64,000 bases of DNA, from positions 248,001 to 312,000 of the IMG/VR virus record IMGVR_UViG_3300005056_000001, one strand, 5' to 3'. Of the stretch, positions 484 to 63,511 are shown piece by piece. A program made the position numbers and the translations under genes. The stretch's first letter is position 1. Every line of letters starts with the position of its first letter. A model generated the notes under the pieces. That model made no database searches. It saw only the letters and a list, made by a program, of their open reading frames with translations, and was not told the DNA's origin.

Positions 484-545
484 GTTAAATAAATGTTAAG
501 GGTACGGGAATATTTGGCAATGGTTTTAATGTTCCCGTACTTAGC
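484..545 (+). promoter_or_regulatory. GTTAA-N6-GTTAA direct repeat + inverted repeat + putative -7 box
   Basis: gttaaataaatgttaa (484-499), inverted repeat gtacgggaatatt/aatgttcccgtac (502-540), tacttag at 538. The same architecture recurs at six other loci. Confidence 0.55.
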
Positions 546-582
546 GTCAACGAAATAATCAATAACAAAAACAGTAATTATC

Positions 583-909
583 ATGAAAAACACAACAATA
601 TTCCAAGTGTCCATAAACAACACGGTTGTTGGTGCAATTTCGGAACACAGTCTTGTATTGGCAGTTTCACACCCTAGGGGGCAAGGTGCATGTGTGTATA
701 AAGATATTAATACATGGCTCCTGACAATGCTAGAAAAATTTGAGAATGTCAAGGAAGCATTCGAGAGTATCGAAATGATTCCCTCAGAAGGTTTTGACTT
801 CTTGGAAGGTTTTGAGCCGCAAGAACGTGTGATTCTAATTTTTGGGGACAATGGATTAGTCAGAATAGACTTTTGTCCTATAGAATACTTGTCAGAAATA
901 ATCAAATAA
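583..909 (+). CDS. hypothetical protein
   Basis: 108-aa ORF with A-rich leader, first gene after the promoter motif. Confidence 0.75.
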   Translation: MKNTTIFQVSINNTVVGAISEHSLVLAVSHPRGQGACVYKDINTWLLTMLEKFENVKEAFESIEMIPSEGFDFLEGFEPQERVILIFGDNGLVRIDFCPIEYLSEIIK

Positions 910-943
910 CAGTAAAAAGTAAACAAATTCAAAATTCAAAATA

Positions 944-1213
944 ATGCGCACAACACAAGATTTAATCGCAATACTTAAGGCCCTTAATTGTGCCAATAAT
1001 TCATATTTCATTACAGGGGCAGCATGGGAGGACAGAAACGGGACAGAACTCGCTATAAGTCTTGACCGAAACACTCCTCTAAGAGAGCAAATGGCATTCG
1101 ATGCCAAGGTAAAGTCACTAAACTTCGAGATGATCATGAATGCAACGCTCACAAGCAAGGGTGTGCATTACATCTTGGGTGTCGGCGAATTCAAATCAAC
1201 GCTCGATGAATAG
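944..1213 (+). CDS. hypothetical protein
   Basis: 89-aa ORF, A-rich leader, co-directional cluster. Confidence 0.7.
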   Translation: MRTTQDLIAILKALNCANNSYFITGAAWEDRNGTELAISLDRNTPLREQMAFDAKVKSLNFEMIMNATLTSKGVHYILGVGEFKSTLDE

Positions 1214-1553
1214 ACACATGATCCTTGACAAGGCATTCACACAGGAATGTCATCCGTACAACACACGCAAGGCCTTTGTTTATATGATACACAAAAAAGC
1301 CTTTGCATATTGTCCGAGTGTATGGAATTTCGATTTCGTGCCGTTAGATGGCGAACTAAAGGGGTATGTGAGGGTCAATATAAAGGATGGCGAGTTCTTC
1401 CAATTACATCGAAATGAGGTTCACCAAGAAATAGATATACCATCGGATATTATATCTTCACAGGCACCAAATGGCAATAGTCTAATTTCTGTTGTTGGAC
1501 GACCAAGAACAAGGGTGTGTATTGAAGACTTTAACCCTGAAAATGATAAATAA
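1206..1553 (+). CDS. hypothetical protein
   Basis: ORF 1140..1553; the likely start is the ATG at 1206 overlapping the upstream stop; followed by a terminator. Confidence 0.65.
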   Translation: MNRHMILDKAFTQECHPYNTRKAFVYMIHKKAFAYCPSVWNFDFVPLDGELKGYVRVNIKDGEFFQLHRNEVHQEIDIPSDIISSQAPNGNSLISVVGRPRTRVCIEDFNPENDK

Positions 1554-1585
1554 AAAAAATCCTCACCTAGTGGGGATTTTTTTTT
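1552..1585. terminator. bidirectional intrinsic terminator
   Basis: aaaaaaaatcctcac-cta-gtggggatttttttt between convergent genes. Confidence 0.75.
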
Positions 1586-2154
1586 GTTGGTAACTGAACC
1601 GATGCACTTCCTATCTTGAACGCAATGCTTAGCTCAAATGTCCCAAAGTCGTTGTTTGTGGTTTCGCTGTCTAGTGGAATATCGTCTAGTGCAGCAAACA
1701 GAAAGTCCTTGAATGAGAATACAAATGCGGTCTGACGTTTCGTGTTTTTTATCACAATGTCAAGGCTGTCTTTGATGGTGTTCTTGTGGTTGGCCGAATA
1801 CTGCCTCTGAAAACTCTCCCACAGGAATAGGTACGACATGTATGCATCCACATGATGTAGCTCAAGTGTGACCGTCTTTGAGGACAGTCCTTGTACCCAA
1901 CTTTTTGTGCCCAATTGTGGTGCTGTTGTATGACTAAAACCACCGCCTTGTTCTTGTGTCACAAAGCTGTCTGTAAATCCGACTATATTGACCTTTTTAA
2001 TGGTGGCATTCAGGAGCGATATAATGTCCTTTATATAGTCGTCGTCGTCGGCATCCATATATGTATTATATTTGTCAACCAATGACTGTTCAAACCAATG
2101 AGTTTTGAATTTCACGTCTACCAAATCAGACGATGGAGGGTTGAAGTATTTCAT
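1567..2154 (-). CDS. tail tube-like / baseplate tail-tube initiator (T4 gp54/gp19-like fold)
   Basis: 195 aa with the tube-fold pattern (TLELHHVD..YLFLWE..; FSFKDFLF..L; FELSIAF); GTACATA box at 2168-2174. Confidence 0.5.
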   Translation of the reverse strand: MKYFNPPSSDLVDVKFKTHWFEQSLVDKYNTYMDADDDDYIKDIISLLNATIKKVNIVGFTDSFVTQEQGGGFSHTTAPQLGTKSWVQGLSSKTVTLELHHVDAYMSYLFLWESFQRQYSANHKNTIKDSLDIVIKNTKRQTAFVFSFKDFLFAALDDIPLDSETTNNDFGTFELSIAFKIGSASVQLPTKKNPH

Positions 2155-2574
2155 ATTAATTTTATGCTATGTACCAATATTGTTGGTTGTGCCTAAAATC
2201 TATTAGTGGCATATAACGTTATTTGCCACTTTTTGGTAAATTTTACTGTATCAGCTAAAATCGGAAAAAAGCCTAATAACAGCTATACCACTCAACGCCT
2301 GTGTTTGTCGGCTGTTCGGTAGGGGGAATTTTTTGATTTTTTATCAGAAAAAAATGACCACTCTTGCACTTATCAGGGGAAACACGTGATTATTGGACAT
2401 CAAAAACACTTTTGCACGTGCAAAAATAAGCAAAAACTGTTTGAGCTTCGTGACGTTATAATATTAATACATACCACACAGTCGACGTATAAAGGGTTAC
2501 AGCCGATTTTTAAAAAATGTCATTTTTGGTGTCTACTATATAAAACAAAGAATACTTAATTAATAAATAGTAAT

Positions 2575-3501
2575 ATGAACAAATTAGAGAAAGTTTTATC
2601 AGAAATAAACAAGTGTTATGTCAATCGGATAACCTCGAATACATTCATAATTAATGAGGATTTTTGTGTGATATTGGCAGACAAATTAACATTGGATATT
2701 GGTACCTATAAACAACAAAAAGAAGGCTTGGTTAAACACGAGATTCCCGACGATTTATTGGTGCCTGATGGCCCCACAAAAACACTTGGCACAATCTCCC
2801 GAACAGACCTGTTGCATATTTATGAATGTACGGCACAAAACACAGCCAATGGTTGGAGCGATATCGTGTTGTCAGACGGTTTTTTGATTGGCACAGACAA
2901 TATTGGCTTGATGGCCTGCAAACTTATCACAACAAAGAACCTTCCTAGGCCATGTTTGTTCCCCAAGGAGTTATTGCCATTCGTCACAATGGTTTTGGAC
3001 GACAAGCCTATCGGGGTTTTTGTAAAAAAATATAATGGCAAGTTTGTGTTTGGCCTCACAGACGGAAGCAACGGTGTTTTATATCTAAAGAAGTCTCCAT
3101 ATACAAACACGCTCCCTCCCATCAACAAGATCGCACCGAGTTTCAGTGTGGGGGAATATATCAAGATAGGCAAGACCGAGCGTAACTTTATTGGATCGCT
3201 AAACAATCGTTTGTGTTTGCTCCATCAAGATTATATTCGTTCGAACGAAAGAAAAATAAAGTGTCCAATCAAAAAAGGAAAGGAGAACACAACATGGCAC
3301 AGCAACCGAATGTTGAAATTTGCAACCCTGCGGACACCGAAATCTGTTACTGACCATACATACCCAACCATCGGCAAGGAGGTGACAACAGTCAAATTTA
3401 TACCCAATGATCTGCTAAAATTAATTGGTGACCAAGACTGTTTGTTGAGATGGGGCTTGCCTATCAAGGACGAAATGCTTTTGTATGTGGAATATTTGTA
3501 A
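2575..3501 (+). CDS. hypothetical protein, possible DNA pol III beta-clamp-like fold
   Basis: LIGTDNIGLM resembles the clamp motif vATDghRL, and LPPINKIAP resembles yPdy.rviP. Weak. Confidence 0.35.
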   Translation: MNKLEKVLSEINKCYVNRITSNTFIINEDFCVILADKLTLDIGTYKQQKEGLVKHEIPDDLLVPDGPTKTLGTISRTDLLHIYECTAQNTANGWSDIVLSDGFLIGTDNIGLMACKLITTKNLPRPCLFPKELLPFVTMVLDDKPIGVFVKKYNGKFVFGLTDGSNGVLYLKKSPYTNTLPPINKIAPSFSVGEYIKIGKTERNFIGSLNNRLCLLHQDYIRSNERKIKCPIKKGKENTTWHSNRMLKFATLRTPKSVTDHTYPTIGKEVTTVKFIPNDLLKLIGDQDCLLRWGLPIKDEMLLYVEYL

Positions 3502-3568
3502 TGATTTAGTACATAACAAGAAGCCCGACACAAGATTTTATATAAACAGATTTTACGTTCTGTAAAAC

Positions 3569-3922
3569 ATGACAGTAGCAGTCCGCAACAAAAATAACAT
3601 GGAAAAAACAATACAGGCAGCAAAGTACAAGTTCATAGAACTCATGAAGGGTTCTTTGTTTAAGGACGACAAACCCTCGTCATCAAGGATTTTTGGGTAT
3701 GTAATGATGCTCATAATTTTCTTGTTTTCCGTGGTATTTATTGCCACCGAAATAGGAAACGCCATACTTTCTTGGAAAAACGGAAATGTTTATGTACCTT
3801 CATGGCAAACGATTACATTTTTTGGGATGTGTTTGACGCAAAAGTTGACATTACTTGGGATTTACAAAAAAGCAGAGAGTCTTATTCCTAAAAAAACAAT
3901 CGAAAAAAAGCCTGTCCAATAA
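3569..3922 (+). CDS. putative holin / two-TM membrane protein
   Basis: DDKPSSSRIFG followed by two hydrophobic segments and a basic C-terminus; GTACATA box at 3509-3515. Confidence 0.45.
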   Translation: MTVAVRNKNNMEKTIQAAKYKFIELMKGSLFKDDKPSSSRIFGYVMMLIIFLFSVVFIATEIGNAILSWKNGNVYVPSWQTITFFGMCLTQKLTLLGIYKKAESLIPKKTIEKKPVQ

Positions 3923-3972
3923 CAAAAGGACTCACAGGTTAATGAGAATTACATAACTAAACATTGAAATAA

Positions 3973-4584
3973 ATGAGACGAGTTTTTAGATCATCACAAT
4001 ACATTCCTGTTAATATCATACAGGGTGACGATGCCGACAAATGGAACGAGAAGATCTCTGATGGTCGCCATGAGTATGTGATTAGACAACTAGATCAAGG
4101 AATTGATTACAACACGAAAACCGAAGACCTTCCAACCAATTACAACAAATACGAATCCGAGGATGGTATGCACGTTTTAGCATACGGAAAGTATTCTAGT
4201 TTTGTGGGGTTGTACAAAGAAGCAAAGTACAAGTACTTTGACAGCGATTGGTCTTGGAGCGGTCTAGGGGCTGCCCAAATAGAGGATGCTGTTGGTGTTT
4301 TTTCACATAAAGATGTCCGTAATTATTACTACATGTTCCCGCTTAGTGACTATGACAAGAACGAATTTTCTTATATAAACCTAAGAGACAATGAGGGACT
4401 ATTCAGAGTCGAAACAGAAAGAATGAAATTTGGAGGATTTAGACCCCTTGTTAAGGTCAATGTGGCACGTGGGCTTATATACTTCATAGAAGACATGGAT
4501 GTTGAACCTATATCTTTTGAAAAAAAAGGAACCAAGGTGCAATTTATGAGACTCAATCTTTCACAATCCTACATGTTGCAGTAG
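3973..4584 (+). CDS. hypothetical protein (possibly virion-associated)
   Basis: 203-aa ORF in a late-type cluster; variant box TTACATA upstream. Confidence 0.7.
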   Translation: MRRVFRSSQYIPVNIIQGDDADKWNEKISDGRHEYVIRQLDQGIDYNTKTEDLPTNYNKYESEDGMHVLAYGKYSSFVGLYKEAKYKYFDSDWSWSGLGAAQIEDAVGVFSHKDVRNYYYMFPLSDYDKNEFSYINLRDNEGLFRVETERMKFGGFRPLVKVNVARGLIYFIEDMDVEPISFEKKGTKVQFMRLNLSQSYMLQ

Positions 4585-4634
4585 CATAAACTACAAAAAA
4601 CAAAATATACTTAAATCAGTCAACAACCATCAAC

Positions 4635-5819: not shown

Positions 5820-5842
5820 TATTGGTACATATTTAAAAAGAT

Positions 5843-7812: not shown

Positions 7813-7909
7813 TGAGGATGTGTTATACTTTAATAAAATGTTAAAATTATGCACAACACTTGTTTATTTCAAGATATTTTGTATATTTACATCACAACCA
7901 ATACAACAC

Positions 7910-8242
7910 ATGCAACAAGAAGACTATAAAAACGAACACAGCAGGCTAGAAGGTCAAATATTAAGGCTACAATCCGAGCTCCGAGAATCGAAAGCCAAAT
8001 ATATAAAGGACTATTCAGAGTTCCAACTTGACGAAAAGGTAATAATTTGCACACCTACACATACAAATAGTCATGGACAGGTTCCTTGTTCGGAAAGATT
8101 TGCCTACATACACGAGGTTAGTTTAGACTATATTGCAGATTTTCGATACGAATTAAAACAGGCCAAAAAGAACGGCAAGAAGTCAAGGAACAACGAATGG
8201 CTACACACGCATAATTATGTGGAATATCTAAAAAAAATATAA
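7910..8242 (+). CDS. hypothetical protein
   Basis: ORF 7787..8242, likely start MQQEDY at 7910, downstream of a TTAA-N6-GTTAA motif (7829-7844). Confidence 0.7.
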   Translation: MQQEDYKNEHSRLEGQILRLQSELRESKAKYIKDYSEFQLDEKVIICTPTHTNSHGQVPCSERFAYIHEVSLDYIADFRYELKQAKKNGKKSRNNEWLHTHNYVEYLKKI

Positions 8243-12798: not shown

Positions 12799-13152
12799 TT
12801 ATTGTTCAGTATCCCCATTATATATGGCATCCAAAGAGACACCATCCCGTTCCAATTGGGGGTAAGAGTTAATTATTAGATTGGTAATTGTTGTAGTGTA
12901 ATAAGAAAATGGGTTCTTTCTATTGAAATTGAATTTATAATACCTTGTTAACAACCCTTCCATGGCAAACGAAACGACATCGTTTCTGTCTTCTTCTATG
13001 ACATATTTAAAAAGATCCGCCAATTTTTGGGACATGTCATAAAACATTTGCACAAGTTTTCGGGTTGGTTCCCCTTGCCACATAGACATAACCATTTCAT
13101 TGTACATCACTTGTTTGTCGATATCGAGTTTGTCGATCTTTTTTTTTGACAT
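12799..13152 (-). CDS. late-transcription sigma factor (T4 gp55-like)
   Basis: EDRNDVVSFAMEGLLTRYYKFNFNRKNPFSYYTT is the gp55 region-2 motif (FdpeksNPFaYfT). Likely start MSKKK at 13152. Confidence 0.8.
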   Translation of the reverse strand: MSKKKIDKLDIDKQVMYNEMVMSMWQGEPTRKLVQMFYDMSQKLADLFKYVIEEDRNDVVSFAMEGLLTRYYKFNFNRKNPFSYYTTTITNLIINSYPQLERDGVSLDAIYNGDTEQ

Positions 13153-13162
13153 GTATATGTTT

Positions 13163-13321
13163 TTATGAAAGTAAGTGGTCACGCAAATCGTCTTTCTTTA
13201 CCACTTTTGTTCCTTCCTTGAATTCGACGCTGACCTTATCGGTTGTTGATTCAGAAACATTAGCCGAAACTTTTCCTAGTCCGTGTTTTGGGTGATATAC
13301 TTTATCTTCTTCGTTTTTCAT
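13163..13321 (-). CDS. 52-aa Tudor/SH3-like small protein (not in ORF track)
   Basis: Translated by hand: MKNEEDKVYHPKHGLGKVSANVSESTTDKVSVEFKEGTKVVKKDDLRDHLLS; GTACATT box at 13353-13359 upstream. Confidence 0.6.
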   Translation of the reverse strand: MKNEEDKVYHPKHGLGKVSANVSESTTDKVSVEFKEGTKVVKKDDLRDHLLS

Positions 13322-24758: not shown

Positions 24759-24816
24759 TATAAGTAAATAGTACATACCGTAACATTATTGATTAAAAAT
24801 AACAATTTCAGATAAG

Positions 24817-26970: not shown

Positions 26971-26977
26971 GTACATA
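26971..26977 (+). promoter_or_regulatory. candidate late promoter GTACATA (representative copy, before major capsid)
   Basis: The same heptamer precedes at least 16 late/virion genes on the coding strand (see findings). Confidence 0.75.
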
Positions 26978-34264: not shown

Positions 34265-34383
34265 TTATTGATATAATTTGAGAGTGTACCACAATTCGAC
34301 CTTGTGTATTTTTAAGTTATGTACCTTTAAAGGAACAAATATTCATGGTTCTGTGTTTACAAAACGAACAAAAAACATTAAAC

Positions 34384-38535: not shown

Positions 38536-38856
38536 ATGAAGGATACAAACAATAATAACAAGGGCCTGTGTCAGTCCCCATTTATAGGACGCTATGTCAA
38601 CGGGAATTTTAAGAAAGATGGTTGGTGTCCTATATCCTATACATTTGTGATGTTAGATGACGGAAAGGACGACACCAATGCCGAATGCCTAGAGATTGTT
38701 GATTTGGTACCCTGTAATATTGAGTGGGTTAAGAGACCATGCACGGTGTACGAACTCCACCTCAAAGGGCTCGAAGAAACTCCACTCTTTGTCTATGTAA
38801 AAAACGGCGAATTATTTAAATTCCTTTCAGACATTAGAATTTCGATGGCAAATTAA
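38536..38856 (+). CDS. hypothetical protein
   Basis: 106-aa ORF, A-rich leader. Confidence 0.7.
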   Translation: MKDTNNNNKGLCQSPFIGRYVNGNFKKDGWCPISYTFVMLDDGKDDTNAECLEIVDLVPCNIEWVKRPCTVYELHLKGLEETPLFVYVKNGELFKFLSDIRISMAN

Positions 38857-38863
38857 CACAAAC

Positions 38864-38923
38864 GTTAAGGAAGTGTTAATTTACTTGATTTGTGTGTAAC
38901 TAGAACATTTTTACTTACCTTTA
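38864..38923 (+). promoter_or_regulatory. GTTAA-N6-GTTAA repeat + putative -7 box
   Basis: gttaaggaagtgttaa (38864-38879); taccttta at 38916. Confidence 0.55.
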
Positions 38924-38955: not shown

Positions 38956-39141
38956 ATGAACTACCAAGAAAGTCAAGAAGAAGCAAAACGAATACAATCA
39001 ATATGTGAGCAAACTGCAATTGATTATGACATGGAGGTCGAGGATGTTAAGCGTATATATAGCAGATCAAAAAAAGGGTACGAAGATTTCTATGAAGAAT
39101 TAGAACGCTTCATCAGTGAGCGTGTAGAATCCGACTGCTAA
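38956..39141 (+). CDS. hypothetical protein
   Basis: 61-aa acidic ORF. Confidence 0.65.
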   Translation: MNYQESQEEAKRIQSICEQTAIDYDMEVEDVKRIYSRSKKGYEDFYEELERFISERVESDC

Positions 39142-39229
39142 ATATATACAGCAAATCATTCAAGGACTCTTACGAGCTATCAAATTGGGTTGTAGAGACC
39201 AAAGATTATTAATATTACTAGAAAATAAA

Positions 39230-39856
39230 ATGAACCTAACAAACAACGAACTACAACTCCTGTCTAACATGACAGGGAAACAATTCAACGACCTAAAAGA
39301 CATGGTTGAACATTCCAATACGAATGGTTTTAAACACACACTAACAGAGGTCATTGTACGGATGAAAAATGTACATTATGGTGCATGTCCCGAAAACACA
39401 ACCGAGTTGGAACGTCTGTTTTTGAATCCCGACACAACAACCAATTGGTTTGGAGTGGTTTGTGAAAATTTCCGTAAGGAAAAATCCATTATCAGATCAC
39501 ATGGCATTAAAAAATGTGACTTGGTTCCTTTAAAAAAAGGATGGCTTGACACATTTTCCGAAAATAAGGCAGAGCGTATTACGCTAATGTGCATGATAGA
39601 CATTGCCCTTTATAGATTGGAGCAGTTTAAAGCAAAACAAAAGATTTCGGGTGTATCCAAATTGTCGAATCCTGTAACAAAAGAAGAATGGGTCGAGGAT
39701 TTTTTGACAGAATATATTGTTAGACACTCCAACGAACACGAAAATACAAAGGATCGTAAGACCAACCCATTTTATCTAATAGGAGGCAATCCATATGCAC
39801 TACTCGAAAACGAGGACAATCTTGTAAGATTCAGAAAAGTGTTAAGGAAATGTTAA
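39230..39856 (+). CDS. hypothetical protein
   Basis: Likely start MNLTN at 39230. Confidence 0.7.
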   Translation: MNLTNNELQLLSNMTGKQFNDLKDMVEHSNTNGFKHTLTEVIVRMKNVHYGACPENTTELERLFLNPDTTTNWFGVVCENFRKEKSIIRSHGIKKCDLVPLKKGWLDTFSENKAERITLMCMIDIALYRLEQFKAKQKISGVSKLSNPVTKEEWVEDFLTEYIVRHSNEHENTKDRKTNPFYLIGGNPYALLENEDNLVRFRKVLRKC

Positions 39857-39912
39857 AGTCGTGTCTTATCAAAGACAGGGCTTTTTTTATTGGAGTATTT
39901 GTTGTACATTTG
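39841..39912 (+). promoter_or_regulatory. GTTAA-N6-GTTAA repeat + hairpin + TACATTTG -7 box
   Basis: gttaaggaaatgttaa (39841-39856), hairpin aaagtcgtgtctt/aagacagggcttt, tacatttg at 39905. Confidence 0.55.
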
Positions 39913-39958: not shown

Positions 39959-40348
39959 ATGTCAAATACACCATTAGAACAAGCAAAGAAACAATTAGAG
40001 AAGGCTCAGGTAACGTATAATTACTACAACACCATTGAGGAGCTTTTGGCTTTTATGGAATCTTTGGTATATCCAACGGTCAATTGGTGGGCAGGGGAAA
40101 CTTACTCAAAAACAGGGATGTTAGTTTTTGATTCTTTTGATTTCAGGGCAATTATAGAAGATGAAAGTAAGTACTGTAAAACAGGACTTGGCATAAGATA
40201 TTATTCGTCTAAACTAAGCTGTGGTGTGTCAACAGAAGACCTTGGCACCGAACCCGAGTACAAAAAATGGTTACTCTCAAACAGAAGAGTGCTGAATAAA
40301 TTATACAAGGCTTATGCACAAGCCATAAAATTATTCGAAAATAGTTAG
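39959..40348 (+). CDS. hypothetical protein
   Basis: 129-aa ORF. Confidence 0.7.
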   Translation: MSNTPLEQAKKQLEKAQVTYNYYNTIEELLAFMESLVYPTVNWWAGETYSKTGMLVFDSFDFRAIIEDESKYCKTGLGIRYYSSKLSCGVSTEDLGTEPEYKKWLLSNRRVLNKLYKAYAQAIKLFENS

Positions 40349-51577: not shown

Positions 51578-51636
51578 GATTTATATTGTTTATAGGTTTT
51601 TAAAATATTATGTTATATGTACTATTCAAAATATGA

Positions 51637-53535: not shown

Positions 53536-53711
53536 TTTCGCATTGTTTTATGATAATATATCGCAGCAACCATTTGTGGTCGCACATTGATACATTAGGG
53601 TTATATATTTTTTGATATATGTACAAAACATTTTACTTATTTGCACGTTCGGATATTTTTACCTAACTTGGCACAACAGAACATACATTACAATAACAGA
53701 TACAGGATAAT

Positions 53712-54378: not shown

Positions 54379-54404
54379 GTACATATCAAAAAACCCAATA
54401 GTTA

Positions 54405-57617: not shown

Positions 57618-57637
57618 TCACGAATTAATACAATATT

Positions 57638-57907
57638 ATGAAATACGACAAAGAGTTCCTGTTGGATATAGCCTCAGATCTCGAATTTGACCCGTTTACC
57701 GCCACAATAAATGACGGCGGTAATATTACCAAAAAGAAGTTTAAGGATCCTATCGTATGGGTATTTTACGAAGAGGACAGATTGGATATCGAAGACAAAA
57801 GATCGCCAATAAAGCTTTCTGTAAAAATAAGCGATATTGATACAATTACCACAGGACATAATACCATAGAATTTCATATGGGCGATATGCACATATTATT
57901 TCTGTGA
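57638..57907 (+). CDS. hypothetical protein
   Basis: 89-aa ORF. Confidence 0.65.
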   Translation: MKYDKEFLLDIASDLEFDPFTATINDGGNITKKKFKDPIVWVFYEEDRLDIEDKRSPIKLSVKISDIDTITTGHNTIEFHMGDMHILFL

Positions 57908-57940
57908 TAATTTAGACACGATAGAAGTGTACAAGACAAA

Positions 57941-57971
57941 TAGAAATGGCTCCCAATTGGGAGCCATTTCT
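57941..57971. terminator. bidirectional hairpin/terminator
   Basis: tagaaatggctccc-aatt-gggagccatttcta, a perfect palindrome. Confidence 0.75.
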
Positions 57972-58515
57972 ATTGTGGTTCGTCGGTCGTGTCCGAAACT
58001 ATTCCTCCTTGAAAGTAACTCAAGACCTTTCTGTCGATATATTGGGTTATAATGTCCTCGAATTTTTGTATCAATCCTATCCTAGGCAACAACACATGAA
58101 GAGTAACAGCCAATACCGCCAATGCAATTGGTGCAATCATGATTACCGAAATTTGTTTATCCAATAAGAGAAATGATGGTACAACCGAAATGAATGTTGC
58201 AATAAACTGTGTCAGACTTCTAGAGCTTACAATAGAAGCAATCGTAACAAACATGGCAGCCATAAAAACACCGTGGACATGGAAATTGCCAAAGTTGTTT
58301 GGGTAAACCCATTGTCCTAGATGGATAGACACGTTCATAGACAAAACAAGTACGGCAATGGTGCTTGCCAAAACCATGTTCAATCGGGTCTTTGCCTCGC
58401 TTGGCATTTTGTGTTTTGTTTCTCGGATTTTTTGGAGTGTTCTGAGCCCAAATGAGCCAAATGTAATCATTGTCAAATAAATAATAAATACTATAATTGT
58501 AATTGTTTGATGCAT
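57970..58515 (-). CDS. multi-pass membrane protein
   Basis: About five hydrophobic segments. Confidence 0.7.
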   Translation of the reverse strand: MHQTITIIVFIIYLTMITFGSFGLRTLQKIRETKHKMPSEAKTRLNMVLASTIAVLVLSMNVSIHLGQWVYPNNFGNFHVHGVFMAAMFVTIASIVSSRSLTQFIATFISVVPSFLLLDKQISVIMIAPIALAVLAVTLHVLLPRIGLIQKFEDIITQYIDRKVLSYFQGGIVSDTTDEPQ

Positions 58516-58543
58516 TATTGTTGTTTTTTGTTGGTTAAAAAAT

Positions 58544-59419
58544 TTAGTCGTATTTTATCTTCCTTGGTTTTCTACACCATGTGTTCGGGACGTTTATGTA
58601 TCTAATTTTAGGAAGCTCCTCGATCCATTCGGGTAATTCCATTCTTTCGTTTCCGCCTAGCCATAGACATTCAAGGTTGTTTAGATTTTTCATTGACTCA
58701 GGAAGGTGTGTGATATCATTACCCGACAAGTATAGAAACTTAAGAGATTCTAGCTCACCAATACTTTCGGGTAACTCGTTTAAATTATTGTTTTGGAAAT
58801 TCAAGTCTGTAATATTTTTAAGATCACCGATGTGTTTTGGCATTGTTTCTATGAGACCATCACGAACATTCAATACACTCAACATTTTCAGGTCACATAG
58901 CGAGTCGGGCAATTCGGTCAATTTATTTCCGATTAAACCAAGATATGACAAGTGTTTAAGGTTCCCAATATCTTTTGGTATCGAGGACACATCACACCTT
59001 ATCAAATCTAAACCTCTAAGGTTTTGTAAACTACACAACCAATCAGGCAAGTCTCCAAGCACACAATCACAGGTGACAAAAGTTCGTAGACTTTTAAGAT
59101 TCTTCATGCTATCAGGAAGATGTGTGATATTGCAGTATTCTAATTTAATCTTTTCTAAATGTGTCAGTAGTCCGATATTTTCGGGAATTGTATATTTATG
59201 CATAAAGCCTCTTGTTAGGGTTTTCGTACTGCCCAACTTTCTTAATAAGTCCAATAAAGGGAAATTTATACTTAACGGATTAAAAGAAATGTACAGCTCA
59301 TAATACCCGCTAAAATCCATCACAATATTATTGGACTCAACCAATTGCAATGCAAGTTCAATATTGTTGCTGTCCCATGTGTGAATGAGGTCTAGTATTT
59401 TTTGTTCGTCTGTTGTCAT
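58544..59419 (-). CDS. leucine-rich repeat protein
   Basis: About nine 23-aa LRRs (..LPESIGELESLKFLYLSGN..); start MTTDEQ at 59419 forms an ATGA overlap with the upstream gene. Confidence 0.95.
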   Translation of the reverse strand: MTTDEQKILDLIHTWDSNNIELALQLVESNNIVMDFSGYYELYISFNPLSINFPLLDLLRKLGSTKTLTRGFMHKYTIPENIGLLTHLEKIKLEYCNITHLPDSMKNLKSLRTFVTCDCVLGDLPDWLCSLQNLRGLDLIRCDVSSIPKDIGNLKHLSYLGLIGNKLTELPDSLCDLKMLSVLNVRDGLIETMPKHIGDLKNITDLNFQNNNLNELPESIGELESLKFLYLSGNDITHLPESMKNLNNLECLWLGGNERMELPEWIEELPKIRYINVPNTWCRKPRKIKYD

Positions 59420-60045
59420 TTTGTATAGGTTATCCAATCATATAATAATTCACCGTTGTGCTTACTAACCACACAATCATAAGAAACTTTCTTGTGCTCG
59501 TTGTGTGCCCAAAGATGTGTAATAATATTTGCCTTTACTTTGTCGGGCTTGAGGTTCTTCAATAAGTGTGTTACTAGGTTCGGGTGGATTCGCTTGTTTA
59601 TACACCAAAGAAGAATAATATCCACATGATTGACATAGTATAGCAAAACAAAAATATACTTCATACAGTGTCCAATATTTTCAATGGGCATTATGACATT
59701 GGGACAAGTCGAAAAAGCGTAGCCTTCTGAGGTTAGTATCAGGTCTGTATGACTATCTCCCATGCCTGTCGAAAGAAAGTTTTTGGCTGTCTCATTGAAA
59801 TTATTGTCACAATCCAAGGCAGCGGTAACTGTCCCGAATAATTCGTCAATACGTTTATTGTCGTATATGTCTAACACAAGAAACGACAAATCAAGATTTG
59901 TTGCAGGAACATCACCAACGGTAAATCGAAGATTCTTAAAATCCTCAAGTAGTGGCCCTGAATCCATAAACAGGGTCGTGTCGTTTATAATCCATGACGA
60001 CCCATTTTTTAGGTATAAATTAAGCCCCTCAAATTTTATAGTCAT
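59416..60045 (-). CDS. degenerate (predicted inactive) ABC/AAA_21-type ATPase-like protein
   Basis: FEGLNLYLKNGSS (eroded Walker A), PIENIGHCMK (signature-like), IILLWCINKRIHP (Walker B/D-loop without DE), NIITH (H-loop). Confidence 0.55.
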   Translation of the reverse strand: MTIKFEGLNLYLKNGSSWIINDTTLFMDSGPLLEDFKNLRFTVGDVPATNLDLSFLVLDIYDNKRIDELFGTVTAALDCDNNFNETAKNFLSTGMGDSHTDLILTSEGYAFSTCPNVIMPIENIGHCMKYIFVLLYYVNHVDIILLWCINKRIHPNLVTHLLKNLKPDKVKANIITHLWAHNEHKKVSYDCVVSKHNGELLYDWITYTK

Positions 60046-60063
60046 TGTGTGATAATTTATATG

Positions 60064-60573
60064 TTAATAACCTTCCCATTCATCGTCTGTGTCAATACTA
60101 GGCACATCACTTGTTGTGTCACAGGAAAATGGCAAGTCCTCGTTATCTTTAGGCGCAAACACAGGATGGTTTCCGAGCCATTCTTCAAAGTCGGGCGAAT
60201 CGCTACCGCTATTATTGGAATGTGCCTCGGACTGTCCTGCCATGAATGCCTGTTCAAGTATATCTGTTAGTTTAGTTTTTGTGAATGAAAAATCTGTTAC
60301 TGAAAAATCTTGATGAGGATCCCGACGTCGGTCTGTTGCCTTGAATACAAGTTCTCCGTCTCCACCAATTTCGCTTACCTTAAATACGAAATCATTTAAT
60401 CCGTCATCCGTCCATAAGAAGTCTTCAAACTCTTTTACTGCACCAAAACTAGCGGCCTTGATTAGGTTTGTGTGTAATAAGATCGCCTTTAAATCCACCA
60501 AGAAGTTATCCAAATTGGCAGTTGTAACACAGTCCGTGATATCCTGAAACGTTTTTATTTTATATGTTTTCAT
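60064..60573 (-). CDS. hypothetical protein
   Basis: 169-aa ORF. Confidence 0.7.
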   Translation of the reverse strand: MKTYKIKTFQDITDCVTTANLDNFLVDLKAILLHTNLIKAASFGAVKEFEDFLWTDDGLNDFVFKVSEIGGDGELVFKATDRRRDPHQDFSVTDFSFTKTKLTDILEQAFMAGQSEAHSNNSGSDSPDFEEWLGNHPVFAPKDNEDLPFSCDTTSDVPSIDTDDEWEGY

Positions 60574-60841
60574 TGTCTATTTTTATTAGATTAATTTTTT
60601 CGGTATGTAATTCGCTGTAATACATTGTGTTCATGGCAATATGCACGGCCTCAAGGCATACACAATTAGATCTTAGTCTATAGGAATAATCTTGAATATC
60701 TCCCTTAGACCTTGCTGCCACACAGTCGGGTCTGTTGGCCCATTGTTCCAAGCAAAATTCTATGTCTTTTTTAAGGGTTTTTGAATGCTCCTTGAGTGTT
60801 TCTAGGCTACATTTTGACAATGTTTTTTTGTCGTAAACCAT
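60560..60841 (-). CDS. hypothetical protein
   Basis: 93-aa ORF. Confidence 0.7.
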   Translation of the reverse strand: MVYDKKTLSKCSLETLKEHSKTLKKDIEFCLEQWANRPDCVAARSKGDIQDYSYRLRSNCVCLEAVHIAMNTMYYSELHTEKINLIKIDNENI

Positions 60842-60882
60842 AATGTTTTATTTTAATGTTTAGAAAGAATTAAAAAGAGAGT

Positions 60883-61098
60883 TTAATCTTTTTTATTACT
60901 TCGTGCCACTTTTTCGGCCCAACTACATTTTCTTCTTTTTGCATTTAATACAACGTTCTCATCACCGTCTATGCTACAACCATCTAAATTAACACCTTCT
61001 CGGTGTGCCTTTTGGACTGTCTTTCGGATCGTGTTACCTTCCTCTTCGTGTGTGTAGATAGTTTTATTGTCCCTGTCTTGGATTTCAATTTTTCTCAT
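60883..61098 (-). CDS. truncated pentapeptide-repeat-protein N-terminal domain
   Basis: KIEIQDR..IYTHEEEGNTIRKTVQKA..GVNLDG resembles the leader of phage pentapeptide-repeat proteins, but the repeats stop after about one unit. Confidence 0.4.
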   Translation of the reverse strand: MRKIEIQDRDNKTIYTHEEEGNTIRKTVQKAHREGVNLDGCSIDGDENVVLNAKRRKCSWAEKVARSNKKD

Positions 61099-61109
61099 TG
61101 CTTATCTGT

Positions 61110-61313
61110 TTATCTGTTTAATTCGATTAAAATAAGAGGCTCTTTCTTGCCATTAAATTCAAATTGCTTGTGTGTGACCTTTACCACATTTAAAGTCGTT
61201 TCTTGACCATCAATACGTACAGCCACGGACTCACCCTCACGAGGAATAGTTTCAAACACGGTCACGTAACAATCTGTGTTGTCAATATTGCTTTTACAAA
61301 ATCCTTTTAGCAT
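61110..61313 (-). CDS. hypothetical protein
   Basis: 67-aa ORF (IPREGE..V..VTH). Confidence 0.6.
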   Translation of the reverse strand: MLKGFCKSNIDNTDCYVTVFETIPREGESVAVRIDGQETTLNVVKVTHKQFEFNGKKEPLILIELNR

Positions 61314-61407
61314 TTTTTTGATTTAAAGTGACGGGTTCATATGATCCCGTCACAATAATAGTAATATTTTTCGTAATATCAAAACTTTTTGGGGTAATGT
61401 GATGGTA

Positions 61408-61683
61408 TTATTTTTTGACGTTCCCAACATTATTGATCACAACATTATTGTATCCCATTGCCAACAACATTCCTGTTGTTAAATGGTTTAAAAAATGAAA
61501 CACATTCCCGTTCAGGAAATCAATCTTTACCAATGTGTTTCGGATCATCTTGTGTTCCGACTTTGCTGCACAGATATAATCAACCAACATTTGCCATGTT
61601 AAGCCGATATGACCATCAACACCAATTTCTGCATCAATGTCCATGCCTTTTTCTGAAAGTAGATTTAATAGGTAAGTTCTCAT
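61408..61683 (-). CDS. conserved phage hypothetical protein
   Basis: IRNTLVKIDFLNGNVFHFLNHL motif; own promoter cassette upstream. Confidence 0.7.
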   Translation of the reverse strand: MRTYLLNLLSEKGMDIDAEIGVDGHIGLTWQMLVDYICAAKSEHKMIRNTLVKIDFLNGNVFHFLNHLTTGMLLAMGYNNVVINNVGNVKK

Positions 61684-61703
61684 CTTTTATTTTTTTTTGT
61701 GTC

Positions 61704-61776
61704 TTTACTAATGATTGCCTTACAAATATAGACAAAAATCCGTGCCCACAAGCATGGACACGGATTTTAACATTTC
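61704..61776 (-). repeat. 73-bp exact duplicated promoter cassette, copy 1
   Basis: Identical to 62588-62660; contains a hairpin and TATATTTG on the minus strand. Confidence 0.9.
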
Positions 61777-61790
61777 TTTAACGTTTTTAA

Positions 61791-62573
61791 CTAAATTTTC
61801 ATTTTGGAGTTGTTCTTTAAAATACTACTGAGCTCTGTTTTTGAATCCTTCAAAAGCTTTTTGTGTGCCTTAACACTGTCGGTTGCCCATTTAATATGTT
61901 TTTTATAGGAGTTAACACAATCCTTGATGCACTCTTTTTGATATTTCTTGTAACCCTCAATATCATTTTTGTATAATTTGTAATTGTGACAAGATTTGTC
62001 AATACTCTCAAAATCATCCAATAACCAAGAAACATTTTTATGTTCCAATATTTGTGTGACAGTCTTTATGTTTTTCTTGGTGGCTAGGTACTCAAGGTTT
62101 CTGTTAATCGAAGATTTGGCCAATGTAATCACATCGTTCAATTTTTTTGTGCGGTTATTTTGGCGTTTAACGGCCTTTGACAGTGCTTCGTACTTGTCTG
62201 TCACATCTTGTCTGTTTGTTTGAGGAAGGGTGGTTTGTGTGGTGTAGCGTGTATGAAACCGTTGCTTGTTCCATCCACCCGCATAAATAACATCAGTAGT
62301 CAATGTATACTCTCTTTCGTCACGTATGATAATGGCATTAATTGTAACATTCCCACAATCAAGATTTGCCGTGAACGATTTTAGTTTGTCTGTTGGAAGT
62401 GTGTATTTATTTATTGATGTTGCCATCTTATAAACCATGTCCAACCTAAGACATTGTTTGTCGTACTTGCTTAATGCCTTGCCATTCTTTTGGATGTTGT
62501 GGTCATTAACCTTTTTGATAATGGTATTGATCCAAGAGTTTGACTTTTCGATAATTGTTTCCAAGATATGCAT
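61791..62573 (-). CDS. conserved phage hypothetical protein (AGG.N.QR.H.RY motif)
   Basis: TTDVIYAGGWNKQRFHTRY plus a coiled-coil. Confidence 0.7.
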   Translation of the reverse strand: MHILETIIEKSNSWINTIIKKVNDHNIQKNGKALSKYDKQCLRLDMVYKMATSINKYTLPTDKLKSFTANLDCGNVTINAIIIRDEREYTLTTDVIYAGGWNKQRFHTRYTTQTTLPQTNRQDVTDKYEALSKAVKRQNNRTKKLNDVITLAKSSINRNLEYLATKKNIKTVTQILEHKNVSWLLDDFESIDKSCHNYKLYKNDIEGYKKYQKECIKDCVNSYKKHIKWATDSVKAHKKLLKDSKTELSSILKNNSKMKI

Positions 62574-62587
62574 AATGACTATTTTTG

Positions 62588-62660
62588 TTTACTAATGATT
62601 GCCTTACAAATATAGACAAAAATCCGTGCCCACAAGCATGGACACGGATTTTAACATTTC
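62588..62660 (-). repeat. 73-bp exact duplicated promoter cassette, copy 2
   Basis: Identical to 61704-61776. Confidence 0.9.
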
Positions 62661-62679
62661 CTTAACAGTATGTCATTAA

Positions 62680-63180
62680 TTAACGATTGTATATATCTTC
62701 TTCCTCATCTGTTAGGGGTATATTACCTTTTACCTTAGTTAAAGCAATTTCGGCTTTTATGGCCTCGACTTTACGGTGAAAATTACCCATTTCAGCATAG
62801 ACATTCTCGGAATCACTGTGTCTAAGGTTGTTGGAATCTATACGCAATTCTGAAATAGATCTTTCCATCGTGTCGATTTCGGATAACAAAATTTGCTCTC
62901 TGCGTAATTTATCCTGAATTAAAGATTTAGGTTCCCCTATTAAGGCTTTAATTATTTTTGCCAACAGGAAAAATCCCCAAAACAGGCTTAGTAACCACAT
63001 ATCATTGTGACTATAAGAATATTGTTTCAATTTAATCAGGTTATATTTTGTAGGATCCTTGTATTTATTGGTTATAAATATATTATATAACCTTATACAT
63101 CCGAACATCACAAGAGATAAATAGAAATATCCAATAACAAATAATACATTAAAAGGAATTGTTTTTATATACTCAAACAT
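62680..63180 (-). CDS. two-TM membrane protein with coiled-coil
   Basis: Two hydrophobic segments, then a charged helix. Confidence 0.7.
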   Translation of the reverse strand: MFEYIKTIPFNVLFVIGYFYLSLVMFGCIRLYNIFITNKYKDPTKYNLIKLKQYSYSHNDMWLLSLFWGFFLLAKIIKALIGEPKSLIQDKLRREQILLSEIDTMERSISELRIDSNNLRHSDSENVYAEMGNFHRKVEAIKAEIALTKVKGNIPLTDEEEDIYNR

Positions 63181-63215
63181 TTTTTATTTTTAAAAGGTTG
63201 AAGAATTATAAGTCA

Positions 63216-63416
63216 TTACGATTGTGTCAGTCTACCCTTTCCGATCCAAATGATCAACGTGTCACCGTCGGTTCTGTGCATGGTAGTCAATTCGGCAGCC
63301 ATACAGTCTTCTAGTATGCTACACAATCTCTCGGCAGAGTACTTAAACTCGCTATTGTGTTCATAACCAACCTCTTTTAGCTTAGATTTCCAATATAAAA
63401 TTCTAATAGTTTTCAT
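63216..63416 (-). CDS. hypothetical protein
   Basis: 66-aa ORF downstream of a promoter cassette. Confidence 0.6.
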   Translation of the reverse strand: MKTIRILYWKSKLKEVGYEHNSEFKYSAERLCSILEDCMAAELTTMHRTDGDTLIIWIGKGRLTQS

Positions 63417-63449
63417 AGTCGTAAATTAATGTTGTTTTAATCAATAGCA

Positions 63450-63511
63450 CAATATTAAACAAAAAAGTCCGTACCAAAAAATTTTAGTACGAACTTTAAC
63501 ATTTTCTTAAC
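63450..63511 (-). promoter_or_regulatory. GTTAA-N6-GTTAA repeat + hairpin + TAATATTG box
   Basis: Minus strand gttaagaaaatgttaa-agttcgtactaaaa..ttttggtacggact...taatattg. Confidence 0.55.

What the first reader, a model, noticed from the sequence alone, without database searches (positions are those of the whole stretch)
484..63511. GTTAA-N6-GTTAA direct repeat at a fixed distance upstream of host-type promoters (OmpR/PhoB-like box)
Seen at 484-499, 7829-7844 (first unit TTTAA), 38864-38879 and 39841-39856 on plus, and at 61767-61782, 62651-62666 and 63496-63511 on minus. It is always oriented with the downstream accessory genes and lies 36-38 nt before a TAnnTT(T/A)(G/A)-like box (48 nt at 39841, about one helical turn more). 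Known: an 11-bp-period direct repeat is the hallmark of winged-helix OmpR/PhoB-family sites (TTAACA-like Pho boxes), and TAnnTTTG is the Bacteroidota sigmaA -7 element. Inference: accessory operons are wired to a host two-component regulator (possibly phosphate status) or to a phage activator.
Basis: partly seen in the sequence, partly recalled or inferred. Interest (0 to 1): 0.6.

Follow-up and report, generated by a model that had tools for sequence, protein, structure and literature searches.

The report
Pho-box-like repeat upstream of phage promoters
A 16-base double repeat sits at a fixed, helix-phased distance in front of about 35 host-type promoters of a 368-kb Bacteroidota jumbo phage and of hundreds of other Bacteroidota phage contigs; the same hexamer repeat marks phosphate-transporter (pstS) promoters across the host phylum, so the phage most likely plugs its small accessory genes into a host two-component regulator, probably PhoB.

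Summary
GTTAA-N6-GTTAA occurs 6 times in the window (0.34 expected) and 32 times in the 368-kb phage genome. A weight matrix finds 36 sites. Of these, 34 are intergenic, co-oriented with the next gene and 36-38 nt (25 sites) or 47-49 nt (9 sites) before a Bacteroidota -7 box (TAnnTTTG).

The same composite is spacing-specific across IMG/VR: more than 106 contigs at 36-38 nt, 84 one helical turn further, and only 11-15 at half-turn offsets. It is about 2,500 times rarer per base in Bacteroidota genomes.

Read on the other strand the element is TTAACA-N5-TTAACA. Arrays of this hexamer at 11-bp period lie upstream of pstS in 9 of 37 Bacteroidota loci (none in 30 recA control loci) and before one of three phoX genes examined.

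The phage has no OmpR-type domain and shares no candidate activator with other motif-bearing phages.

Best reading: one binding site for a dimer of a host OmpR/PhoB-family regulator, PhoB being the leading candidate, in an inverted, class-I-like position. In 15 sites the upstream gene's terminator hairpin sits between repeat and -7 box, forming reusable terminator-promoter cassettes. Binding and phosphate dependence are inferred, not shown.

The parts
484..499 (+). Double repeat GTTAAATAAATGTTAA, 3 nt after the stop codon of the upstream ORF (1-480)
500..542 (+). Spacer hairpin (dG -21.3, z -5.7) without a clear T-run; its 3' arm overlaps the -7-like box TACTTAGC (about 538-545)
583..909 (+). 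Downstream ORF, 108 aa, no Pfam match
7829..7844 (+). Variant repeat TTTAATAAAATGTTAA (matrix score 19.3)
7882..7889 (+). -7 box TATATTTA, 37 nt after the repeat; CTTG (-33-like) 19 nt upstream of it; ORF 7910-8242 follows
38864..38879 (+). Double repeat GTTAAGGAAGTGTTAA, 7 nt after the stop of ORF 38536-38856
38916..38923 (+). -7 box TACCTTTA, 36 nt after the repeat; ORF 38956-39141 (61 aa) follows
39841..39856 (+). Double repeat GTTAAGGAAATGTTAA; its last TAA is the stop codon of ORF 39185-39856
39855..39891 (+). Terminator-like hairpin plus T-run (dG -13.5) directly after the repeat
39905..39912 (+). -7 box TACATTTG, 48 nt after the repeat (the class one helical turn further); ORF 39959-40348 (129 aa) follows
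61767..61782 (-). Double repeat GTTAAAGAAATGTTAA, 8 nt after the stop of ORF 61791-62573
61735..61768 (-). A-run/stem/T-run terminator hairpin (dG -21.3, z -6.0); loop CTTG is the -33-like element
61723..61730 (-). -7 box TATATTTG, 36 nt after the repeat; conserved leader TAAGGCAATCA; ORF 61683-61408 (91 aa)
62651..62666 (-). Double repeat GTTAAGGAAATGTTAA, 13 nt after the stop of ORF 62680-63180
62607..62652 (-). Hairpin (62619-62652) and -7 box TATATTTG (62607-62614). This cassette is 97% identical to the one at 61767 although the genes are unrelated; ORF 62573-61791 (260 aa)
63496..63511 (-). Double repeat GTTAAGAAAATGTTAA, 9 nt after the stop of ORF 63521-63829
63450..63497 (-). Hairpin plus T-run (63464-63497, dG -16.4) and -7 box TAATATTG (63450-63457), 38 nt after the repeat; ORF 63416-63216 (66 aa)

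Best explanation
The 22-bp element AA-R-Y-GTTAA-N5-Y-GTTAA-AA consists of two 11-bp units. Read on the other strand it is TTAACA-N5-TTAACA. It is most likely one binding site for a head-to-tail dimer of a host OmpR/PhoB-family response regulator. PhoB is the leading candidate (roughly 60% of this explanation); otherwise it is a paralogue with the same half-site.

The site lies upstream of complete sigmaA promoters (-33 TTG, -7 TAnnTTTG), at about -66 to -51 or one helical turn further. Its orientation is opposite to that in host pst promoters. From there the bound regulator would touch RNA polymerase on one face of the helix, as a class-I-type activator does. That would raise transcription of about 34 mostly monocistronic small accessory or early-type genes when the regulator is phosphorylated (phosphate limitation, or Pho activation caused by infection).

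Because the spacer sequence is free, the phage often places the upstream gene's intrinsic terminator inside it. This gives compact terminator-enhancer-promoter cassettes, some of which are reused almost unchanged before unrelated genes.

Shown: the motif, its geometry, its phasing, its spread among phages, and its identity with the pstS-upstream hexamer.

Inferred: the binding protein, the sign of regulation and the signal.
For: (1) Statistics and anatomy.
- 6 sites in the window against 0.34 expected and 32 in the genome against 3 for the control.
- 36 matrix sites against 0 in the control.
- 34 are intergenic, co-oriented, and 69-117 nt before an ATG.

(2) Helical phasing.
- In the phage the spacing to the -7 box is 36-38 nt (25 sites) or 47-49 nt (9 sites). 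The strict composite gives 8, 2 and 0 for the on-phase, one-turn-further and all off-phase bins.

(3) The element works only as a pair. Lone GTTAA shows no positional peak before -7 boxes.

(4) A host factor is indicated.
- The composite occurs in phage contigs of 25-54% GC and different lineages, and in a relative with 70% TerL identity.
- It occurs in more than 120 bacterial contigs, of which about 74 of the 80 rows shown are Bacteroidota, before conserved host genes and sRNAs.
- The phage has no Trans_reg_C domain.
- No shared candidate protein was found between this phage and the other motif-bearing contigs.

(5) Link to Pho.
- pstS loci (136 kb) hold 6 exact two-repeat matches and 13 triple TTAACA arrays in 9 loci, co-oriented and upstream. 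recA loci from the same genomes (112 kb) hold 0 and 0.
- One of three phoX loci examined has 4 phased units.
- The identical 16-mer GTTAAGAAATTGTTAA is found at pstS promoters (L404, L409) and at phage-type promoters (L143, L045, L090).
- One phage site (genome 141547) has the pst-like orientation with the same 33-nt spacing as L409.

(6) Precedent. The cyanobacterial Pho box is PyTTAAPyPy(T/A), and host PhoB binds cyanophage S-PM2d promoters (PMC10976474).
Against: - In pst promoters the hexamers are in the opposite orientation, come in threes, and lie closer to the -7 box (23-33 nt where one could be placed; the third hexamer about 12 nt from it in L404). None of the 37 pstS loci has the phage geometry.
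- Host operons that do have the phage geometry are a TetR-OEP-HlyD-MFS efflux operon, YceI-DinB-NDH2, DUF1573, an OMP beta-barrel, an ABC ATPase and sRNAs. None of these is a classic Pho gene.
- From my own knowledge, E. coli PhoB activates through sigma region 4 from a -35-proximal box, not from -60.
- Making the main promoters of many phages depend on a starvation signal seems risky. Their near-consensus -33/-7 elements suggest substantial basal activity.
- The phage encodes no PhoH; pstS was not searched in the phage genome.
- No RNA data, transcription start or binding data could be obtained.
Confidence: 0.5

Rival explanations
1. UP-element-like site. The two GTTAA units are optimal docking sites for the two alpha C-terminal domains of Bacteroidota RNA polymerase, giving constitutively very strong phage early promoters with no regulator involved.
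For: - Position upstream of the -33 element and strict helical phasing with a second class one turn further. From my own knowledge, E. coli UP subsites tolerate a shift of one turn.
- A/T-rich flanks.
- Use by many unrelated Bacteroidota phages, usually 1-3 copies per contig, as expected for strong early promoters.
- Invariance of the pentamer across hosts of 25-54% GC fits a highly conserved reader such as alpha.
- Several host cases are sRNA or tRNA genes.
Against: - No enrichment of single half-sites at the phased position in 1,154 host or 3,024 viral -7 boxes.
- Extremely rare in hosts: 9 strict hits in 301 genomes.
- Absent from the four tandem rRNA promoters of the one genome where they could be read.
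- It ends about 14 nt before the -33 element rather than abutting it.
- The same hexamer forms arrays between about -55 and -20 of pstS promoters (the region upstream of and partly over the -33), which is regulator-like and not UP-like.
Confidence: 0.17
2. Site for a phage-encoded activator that switches on a delayed-early or middle class, in the way lambda CII (TTGC-N6-TTGC) or T4 MotA acts. The activator would be packaged or made from plain promoters.
For: - The strict composite is about 2,500 times denser per base in the phage than in host genomes.
- The phage has other promoter classes that could express an activator first: plain -33/-7 promoters, a palindrome-operator class, and GTACATA late-type promoters.
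- Most phage proteins are unannotated.
Against: - The element is conserved before host genes across several Bacteroidota classes (Flavobacterium TetR operon in many species, DUF1573 in four genera, a Sphingobacteriaceae sRNA) and at pstS.
- The only proteins shared at BLAST 1e-6 with many (19-21) of the 158 motif-bearing phage loci are DNA methyltransferases; three unannotated proteins shared with 3-6 loci were not examined.
- No OmpR-type domain in the phage.
- Small phages carry the element on what looks like their main early promoter.
Confidence: 0.1
3. The element binds a host OmpR-family regulator, but the regulator represses or is neutral, or the repeat mainly serves as homology for cassette shuffling (like T4 PeSL elements) rather than for activation.
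For: - Eight near-identical cassettes lie before unrelated genes at 2.7-354 kb.
- Inverted Pho boxes are repressive at some B. subtilis promoters (from my own knowledge).
- The core promoter elements are already near consensus.
Against: - The 16-mer is conserved while the spacer and leader differ completely among most sites (median pair identity 34%) and among unrelated phages. The repeat itself is therefore under selection, not just carried along.
- Repression by occlusion would not need helical phasing at -60 or -70.
Confidence: 0.12

Closest known systems
Pho boxes on cyanophage genes controlled by host PhoBR (P-SSM2 pstS; S-PM2d, PMC10976474)
   Same: Phage promoters carry the host's PhoB-type direct repeat with a TTAA core (cyanobacterial consensus PyTTAAPyPy(T/A)). 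Hypothetical small genes are among the targets. The regulator is supplied by the host.
   Different: In cyanophages there are a few degenerate boxes, mostly near auxiliary phosphate genes, and prediction is unreliable. Here there are about 35 near-perfect copies in one genome, a strict inverted and phased geometry upstream of an intact -33/-7 promoter, no phoH in the phage (phage pstS not searched), and spread over hundreds of Bacteroidota phage contigs.
OmpR/PhoB-family operator sites (B. subtilis PhoP TTAACA repeats, enterobacterial PhoP TGTTTA-N5-TGTTTA, WalR TGTWAH-N5-TGTWAH, CpxR GTAAA-N5-GTAAA), quoted from my own knowledge
   Same: Hexamer or pentamer direct repeats at 10-11 bp period, with two units per dimer. 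TGTTAA-N5-TGTTAA fits the WalR-type degenerate consensus and differs by one base from the PhoP box. Some family members activate from upstream positions in either orientation.
   Different: The binding protein is not identified here. The canonical Pho architecture (box replacing the -35) is met by only one phage site.
E. coli-type UP element (alpha-CTD)
   Same: An upstream, A/T-flanked, two-part element on one helix face that would boost strong phage early promoters.
   Different: Farther upstream, all-or-none pair, G/C-containing specific pentamer, not at rRNA promoters, rare in hosts.
T4-type PeSL cassettes (promoter-early stem-loop; Arbiol et al. 2010, quoted from my own knowledge)
   Same: Repeated intergenic modules that combine a stem-loop terminator and an early promoter between small ORFs of plastic genome regions.
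   Different: Here the terminator lies inside the promoter, between enhancer and -7 box, and the module carries a regulator-type double repeat. Recombination was not tested.
Lambda CII sites (TTGC-N6-TTGC)
   Same: A direct repeat with an N6 spacer on phage promoters.
   Different: CII sites straddle the -35 and the activator is phage-encoded. Neither holds here.

Membership tests
OmpR/PhoB-family response-regulator site (Pho-box type) | Tandem direct repeats of a 5-7 bp core at 10-11 bp period, two units per dimer | tested here: met
   Two 11-bp units, with the core invariant in 32 of 32 exact sites and conserved Y and A flanks.
OmpR/PhoB-family response-regulator site (Pho-box type) | The same core repeat upstream of canonical Pho genes (pstS, phoX) in the host phylum | tested here: met
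   TTAACA arrays in 9 of 37 pstS loci against 0 of 30 recA loci; 6 against 0 exact two-repeat matches; one of three phoX loci with 4 units.
OmpR/PhoB-family response-regulator site (Pho-box type) | Canonical Pho promoter geometry: box in direct orientation taking the place of the -35/-33 element | tested here: not met
   34 phage sites are inverted, lie 36-38 or 47-49 nt before the -7 box and keep a -33 TTG. Only genome site 141547 has the pst-like geometry.
OmpR/PhoB-family response-regulator site (Pho-box type) | Bound by the phosphorylated regulator; output depends on phosphate and phoB | not testable with these tools
OmpR/PhoB-family response-regulator site (Pho-box type) | A winged-helix regulator is available (phage or host) | tested here: inconclusive
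   The phage has no PF00486 match at E<=1. Hosts of the phylum have PhoB (PMC3547664, PMC8115612), but this phage's host is not identified.
UP element (RNA polymerase alpha-CTD) | A/T-rich element abutting the -35, with subsites that work singly, typical of rRNA promoters | tested here: not met
   Gap of about 14 nt to the -33 element; no single-half-site peak; absent from Emticicia rRNA promoters (one genome only).
Bacteroidota sigmaA promoter (-33 TTTG / -7 TAnnTTTG) | -7 box TAnnTTTG with a TTG about 19 nt upstream, 20-50 nt before the ATG | tested here: met
   -7 box or a close variant at 34 sites; CTTG/TTTG 18-20 nt upstream in most. The transcription start was not mapped.
Intrinsic terminator | G+C-rich stem-loop followed by a T-run, downstream of a stop codon | tested here: met
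   15 of 36 spacers fold at dG <= -12 and z <= -3; 12 of these have at least 4 T in the tail; arm changes are compensatory between copies; the stop codon lies 3-30 nt upstream.
PeSL-like mobile regulatory cassette | Near-identical promoter plus stem-loop modules between unrelated small ORFs; evidence of recombination at them | tested here: inconclusive
   Eight similar cassettes (59-97% ungapped identity between listed pairs; top pair 97%) lie before non-paralogous genes. Shuffling between related genomes was not examined.
Lambda CII-type phage activator site | Phage-encoded activator; repeat flanks the -35 | tested here: not met
   The repeat is well upstream of the -33; no candidate protein is shared among motif-bearing phages; host genes carry the element.

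The most novel reading that the evidence does not exclude
A phylum-wide 'phage enhancer'. Bacteroidota phages of many lineages have converged on one inverted PhoB-type dimer site at -58 or -69 as a standard add-on to their early or accessory promoters. Infection itself (phosphate drain or envelope perturbation) activates the host regulator, which then acts as a timer or amplifier for phage genes. This architecture is almost unused by the hosts themselves. Alternatively, the element defines the unknown optimal alpha-CTD site of Bacteroidota RNA polymerase.
Probability: 0.2. Interest if true: 0.85.

Novelty: new variant of a known kind. Interest (0 to 1): 0.68.

Why it matters
If correct, this would give three things.

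1. A sequence definition of the Bacteroidota Pho box (TTAACA at 11-bp period). I could not find one in the literature searched.

2. A second, class-I-like promoter architecture for an OmpR/PhoB-type regulator in a phylum whose transcription signals are poorly known.

3. Evidence that hundreds of Bacteroidota phages, including a 368-kb jumbo phage with about 35 copies, couple accessory-gene expression to a host two-component system. This goes far beyond the few Pho boxes known on cyanophage phosphate genes.

There are practical uses too. The 22-mer plus a phased -33/-7 core is a compact, portable and possibly phosphate-tunable promoter part for Bacteroides and Flavobacterium engineering. The composite pattern is also a cheap marker for Bacteroidota phages in metagenomes.

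Tried and rejected
No transcription starts are available.
- Literature: no paper in the searched library links GTTAA or TTAACA repeats to Bacteroidota promoters, UP elements or Pho boxes.
- rRNA-promoter (UP element) test: only one genome had 16S genes with upstream context, and the element is absent there.
- Non-coding targets: Rfam on 20 host loci without a downstream ORF found tRNAs and one FopS sRNA but no rRNA.
- Raw GTTAA-N6-GTTAA is not enriched in five host genomes against the reversed control, so the idea of a general host promoter element was dropped.
- Phage-encoded machinery: no PF00486, no RNA polymerase beta (PF00562) and no PhoH. One sub-threshold Sigma70_r2 hit was not confirmed by Pfam.
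- Gene duplication as the source of the repeats was rejected: the downstream genes are mostly non-paralogous.
- An antisense promoter read from the inverted box was rejected by eye: the 30 nt upstream of the motif are not conserved.
- Phosphate-regulated expression of host operons with the phage geometry could not be checked: the F. johnsoniae study's main text does not mention them.

Full report
**Context.** The window is bases 248001-312000 of a 368,109-bp virus record with direct terminal repeats, about 38% G+C. It encodes a myovirus-type sheath, portal, protease and large terminase. Its nearest cultured relatives by sheath protein are Tenacibaculum phages pT24 and PTm1, Sphingomonas phage PAU and the Lak phages. 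It is therefore a jumbo phage of a Bacteroidota-type host.

**Observation.**
- GTTAA-N6-GTTAA occurs six times in the window against 0.34 expected.
- In the whole genome there are 32 exact copies, against 3 for the reversed pattern.
- Aligning them shows a longer element, AA-R-Y-GTTAA-N-R-W-W-W-Y-GTTAA-A-A, which is two 11-bp units.
- A weight matrix finds 36 sites at a score where the reversed genome gives none.
- Thirty-four of them are intergenic, start 3-30 nt after the stop codon of the upstream gene, point the same way as the next gene and end 69-117 nt before its ATG.
- There are none between 141.5 and 247 kb apart from one weak site at 195 kb.
- The big structural genes instead carry a different upstream word, T-run plus GTACATA, found in 37 upstream regions against 3.7 expected.

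**Geometry.**
- After correcting a few automatic picks by eye, the distance from the repeat to a Bacteroidota -7 box (TAnnTTTG or a close variant) is 36-38 nt at 25 sites and 47-49 nt at 9 sites. Two sites have no such promoter.
- With a strict regular expression the phage gives 8 hits at N35-37, 2 at N46-48 and 0 in five other bins.
- A TTG or CTTG lies 18-20 nt before the -7 box in most sites. These are therefore complete sigmaA-type promoters with an extra upstream element centred near -58 or -69. Numbering assumes the usual position of the -7 box; no transcription start was mapped.
- In 15 of the 36 sites the spacer is a strong hairpin (dG -12 to -24, z -3 to -9). Its stem is flanked by the A-run of the repeat and by a T-run, and the arms differ between copies by compensating changes. 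The hairpin is the intrinsic terminator of the upstream gene, with the -33-like TTG in its loop.
- Eight cassettes (repeat, hairpin, TATATTTG, TAAGGCAATCA) are closely similar. The two at window 61767 and 62651 are 97% identical, and other listed pairs are 59-85%. They stand before unrelated genes across the genome.

**Genes served.** Of 30 downstream proteins scanned, 26 have no Pfam family. The rest are an N6-methylase/helicase fusion, a GmrSD_N (DUF262) protein, a leucine-rich-repeat protein and one sub-threshold hit. This fits early or accessory functions.

**Not a private signal of this phage.**
- A 137-kb relative (terminase 70% identical) has three sites with the same 36-nt spacing to TATATTTG.
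- The same pattern gave 11 contigs at N30-32, 15 at N41-43 and 84 at N46-48. The two preferred spacings, one helical turn apart, therefore hold across phages, and half-turn offsets are at background. This is the signature of a protein that must sit on one face of the helix relative to RNA polymerase.
- Many of the small contigs belong to one terminase family (65 of 158), but the jumbo phages, a 54% G+C contig and others do not.

**Host genomes.**
- The same pattern hit more than 120 bacterial contigs; about 74 of the 80 rows shown are Bacteroidota, from Flavobacteriia, Sphingobacteriia, Cytophagia, Chitinophagia and Bacteroidia.
- Several cases are conserved orthologous promoters:
  - a TetR-OEP-HlyD-MFS efflux operon in more than 20 Flavobacterium species;
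  - DUF1573 genes in Sphingobacterium, Arcicella, Flectobacillus and a groundwater bacterium;
  - YceI-DinB-NDH2 in Emticicia;
  - an unannotated short transcript with its own terminator in Sphingobacteriaceae;
  - a FopS sRNA and a tRNA.
- The element is nevertheless very rare in hosts. There are 9 strict hits in 301 sampled genomes (about 1 Gb), with control 0. The raw 16-mer pattern is not enriched over its reversed control.
- Per base, the strict composite is about 2,500 times denser in the phage.
- Lone half-sites show no peak at the phased position, so the two units act together.
- The four tandem rRNA promoters of Emticicia lack the element.

**Whose site is it?**
- The phage has no OmpR-type winged-helix domain, no RNA polymerase beta homologue and only a sub-threshold sigma-like hit.
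- The only proteins it shares at BLAST 1e-6 with many (19-21) of the motif-bearing phage loci are DNA methyltransferases; three unannotated proteins shared with 3-6 loci were not examined.
- Together with the conserved host promoters, this points to a host factor.

- Around pstS-type genes (PF12849) of about 38 Bacteroidota genomes (37 loci, 136 kb) there are 6 exact two-repeat matches. About 0.75 are expected from the genome-wide density, and the reversed control gives 1.
- Read in the direction of pstS they are TTAACA-N5-TTAACA, usually followed by a third, weaker hexamer. There are 13 triple arrays in 9 loci, all co-oriented and upstream of pstS or of the first gene of its operon.
- Thirty recA loci from the same genomes (112 kb) have none.
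- One of three phoX loci shows four phased units.
- This is what a Pho box looks like. It also resembles the cyanobacterial consensus PyTTAAPyPy(T/A) quoted in PMC10976474 and, from my own knowledge, the B. subtilis PhoP hexamer TTAACA.
- The phage element is the reverse complement of two such units. Even the spacer agrees: the 16-mer GTTAAGAAATTGTTAA is found at the pstS promoters L404 and L409, at the Sphingobacterium sRNA promoter L143 and on phage contigs L045 and L090.
- One of the two 'orphan' phage sites (genome 141547) is in fact a pst-like, direct-orientation box. It lies 33 nt before the TATATTTG of the gene at 141637, the same spacing as in L409.

**Mechanism proposed.** One dimer of a host OmpR/PhoB-family regulator, most likely PhoB, binds the 22-bp element. 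From about -58 or -69 it contacts RNA polymerase on the same helix face, and so raises initiation at an otherwise complete sigmaA promoter.
- The orientation is inverted relative to pst promoters, where the hexamers lie closer to the -7 box (23-33 nt where one could be placed). The phage therefore uses a class-I-like architecture that is distinct from the canonical Pho promoter.
- The sign of regulation, the identity of the regulator and the signal are inferences.
- Two facts argue for caution: host operons with the phage geometry are not classic Pho genes, and many phages seem to use the element on main promoters.
- The regulator could be a paralogue with the same half-site (for example an envelope-stress type), or PhoB could be activated by infection itself.

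**Rivals.**
- An alpha-CTD (UP-like) site explains the position, phasing and ubiquity. It fits poorly with the all-or-none pairing, the rarity in hosts, the absence from rRNA promoters and the pstS arrays.
- A phage-encoded activator explains the phage enrichment but not the conserved host promoters or the lack of a shared protein.
- A purely recombinational role does not explain conservation of the 16-mer amid unrelated flanks.

**Comparison with the known.** Host PhoB control of phage genes is established for cyanophages (P-SSM2 pstS; S-PM2d, with PhoB gel shifts, PMC10976474). The following are new as far as the searched literature goes:
- the Bacteroidota setting;
- the definition of the hexamer array at pstS;
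- the inverted, phased upstream geometry;
- the embedding of a terminator between enhancer and core promoter;
- the number of copies;
- the spread over phage lineages.

I rate it a new variant of a known kind.

**Limits.**
- The host of this phage is not identified.
- Gene calls are my own simple ORF calls.
- Statements about E. coli PhoB, B. subtilis PhoP, WalR, Salmonella PhoP architectures, lambda CII and T4 PeSLs rest on my own knowledge, not on tool results.

Noticed in passing
window about 51616-51622 (-), 53618-53624 (-), 54379-54385 (+), 34318-34324 (-), 24771-24777 (+), 26971-26977 (+), and about 40 more in the genome: A second promoter-like class: a T-run followed by GTACATA, 10-55 nt before the ATG of large structural genes (sheath, terminase, 1282-aa and 1070-aa proteins, protease). 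The 7-mer is in 37 upstream regions against 3.7 expected. It is probably the late promoter, read by unidentified phage-specific machinery.
   Followed up: partly
window 12799-13182 (-): A 127-aa ORF with a sub-threshold Sigma70_r2 match (19.6 bits, E 2.7e-4). A whole-protein Pfam scan did not confirm it. It is a possible gp55-like late sigma factor.
   Followed up: partly
genome 10724(-), 11099(-), 159050(+), 175001(-) (outside the window): A third promoter class: the palindrome ATTACGTAAAACTTGCGTAAT about 25-45 nt before a TAGATTTG -7 box. It looks like an operator and occurs four times with near-identical flanks.
   Followed up: no
genome 141547-141562 (-) / gene 141637 (+): This 'orphan' repeat reads TTAACAAAACATTAAC in the direction of the opposite-strand gene and lies 33 nt before its TATATTTG. 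That is the same geometry as a host pst operon promoter (L409), so it is the one canonical Pho-type promoter of the phage.
   Followed up: partly
L143, L178, L194, L206, L252 (Sphingobacteriaceae genomes): A conserved short transcript of about 60-70 nt (…CATAATTTAGGTTTATAATTGGTT… plus terminator) lies directly after a promoter with the phage-type repeat. It has no Rfam family and is a candidate new sRNA, possibly regulated by the same factor.
   Followed up: partly
L394, L395, L404, L409, L411, L412, L414, L422, L388 (pstS loci); L425 (phoX): A Bacteroidota Pho-box candidate: three or four (T/G)TAACA hexamers at 11-bp period, co-oriented with pstS or phoX. I found no description of it in the searched literature.
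   Followed up: yes
genome 2708, 31265, 33276, 131351, 247249, 309767, 310651, 353951: Eight closely similar terminator-promoter cassettes (repeat, hairpin, TATATTTG, TAAGGCAATCA) stand before unrelated genes. Ungapped identity between listed pairs is 59-97% (the 309767/310651 pair is 97%). They are possible substrates for gene shuffling, like T4 PeSLs.
   Followed up: partly
L065 (IMGVR_UViG_3300028805_000076, 120 kb) and other large contigs (380 kb, 410 kb, 273 kb): Other large phage contigs carry dense arrays of the repeat (12 copies in 11.7 kb of L065), so the many-copy use is not unique to this genome.
   Followed up: no
genome 60362-63328 (-), 83764-84585 (+): Genes served by the element include an N6-adenine methylase fused to a helicase (988 aa) and a GmrSD_N/DUF262 protein. 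These are plausible anti-defence or DNA-modification functions.
   Followed up: no
L081:6957-7478 and 36 other small phage contigs: A 173-aa protein family weakly similar to phage sigma factors (phrog_1740, E 3.5e-5) is common in the small motif-bearing phage contigs. Pfam finds nothing.
   Followed up: no
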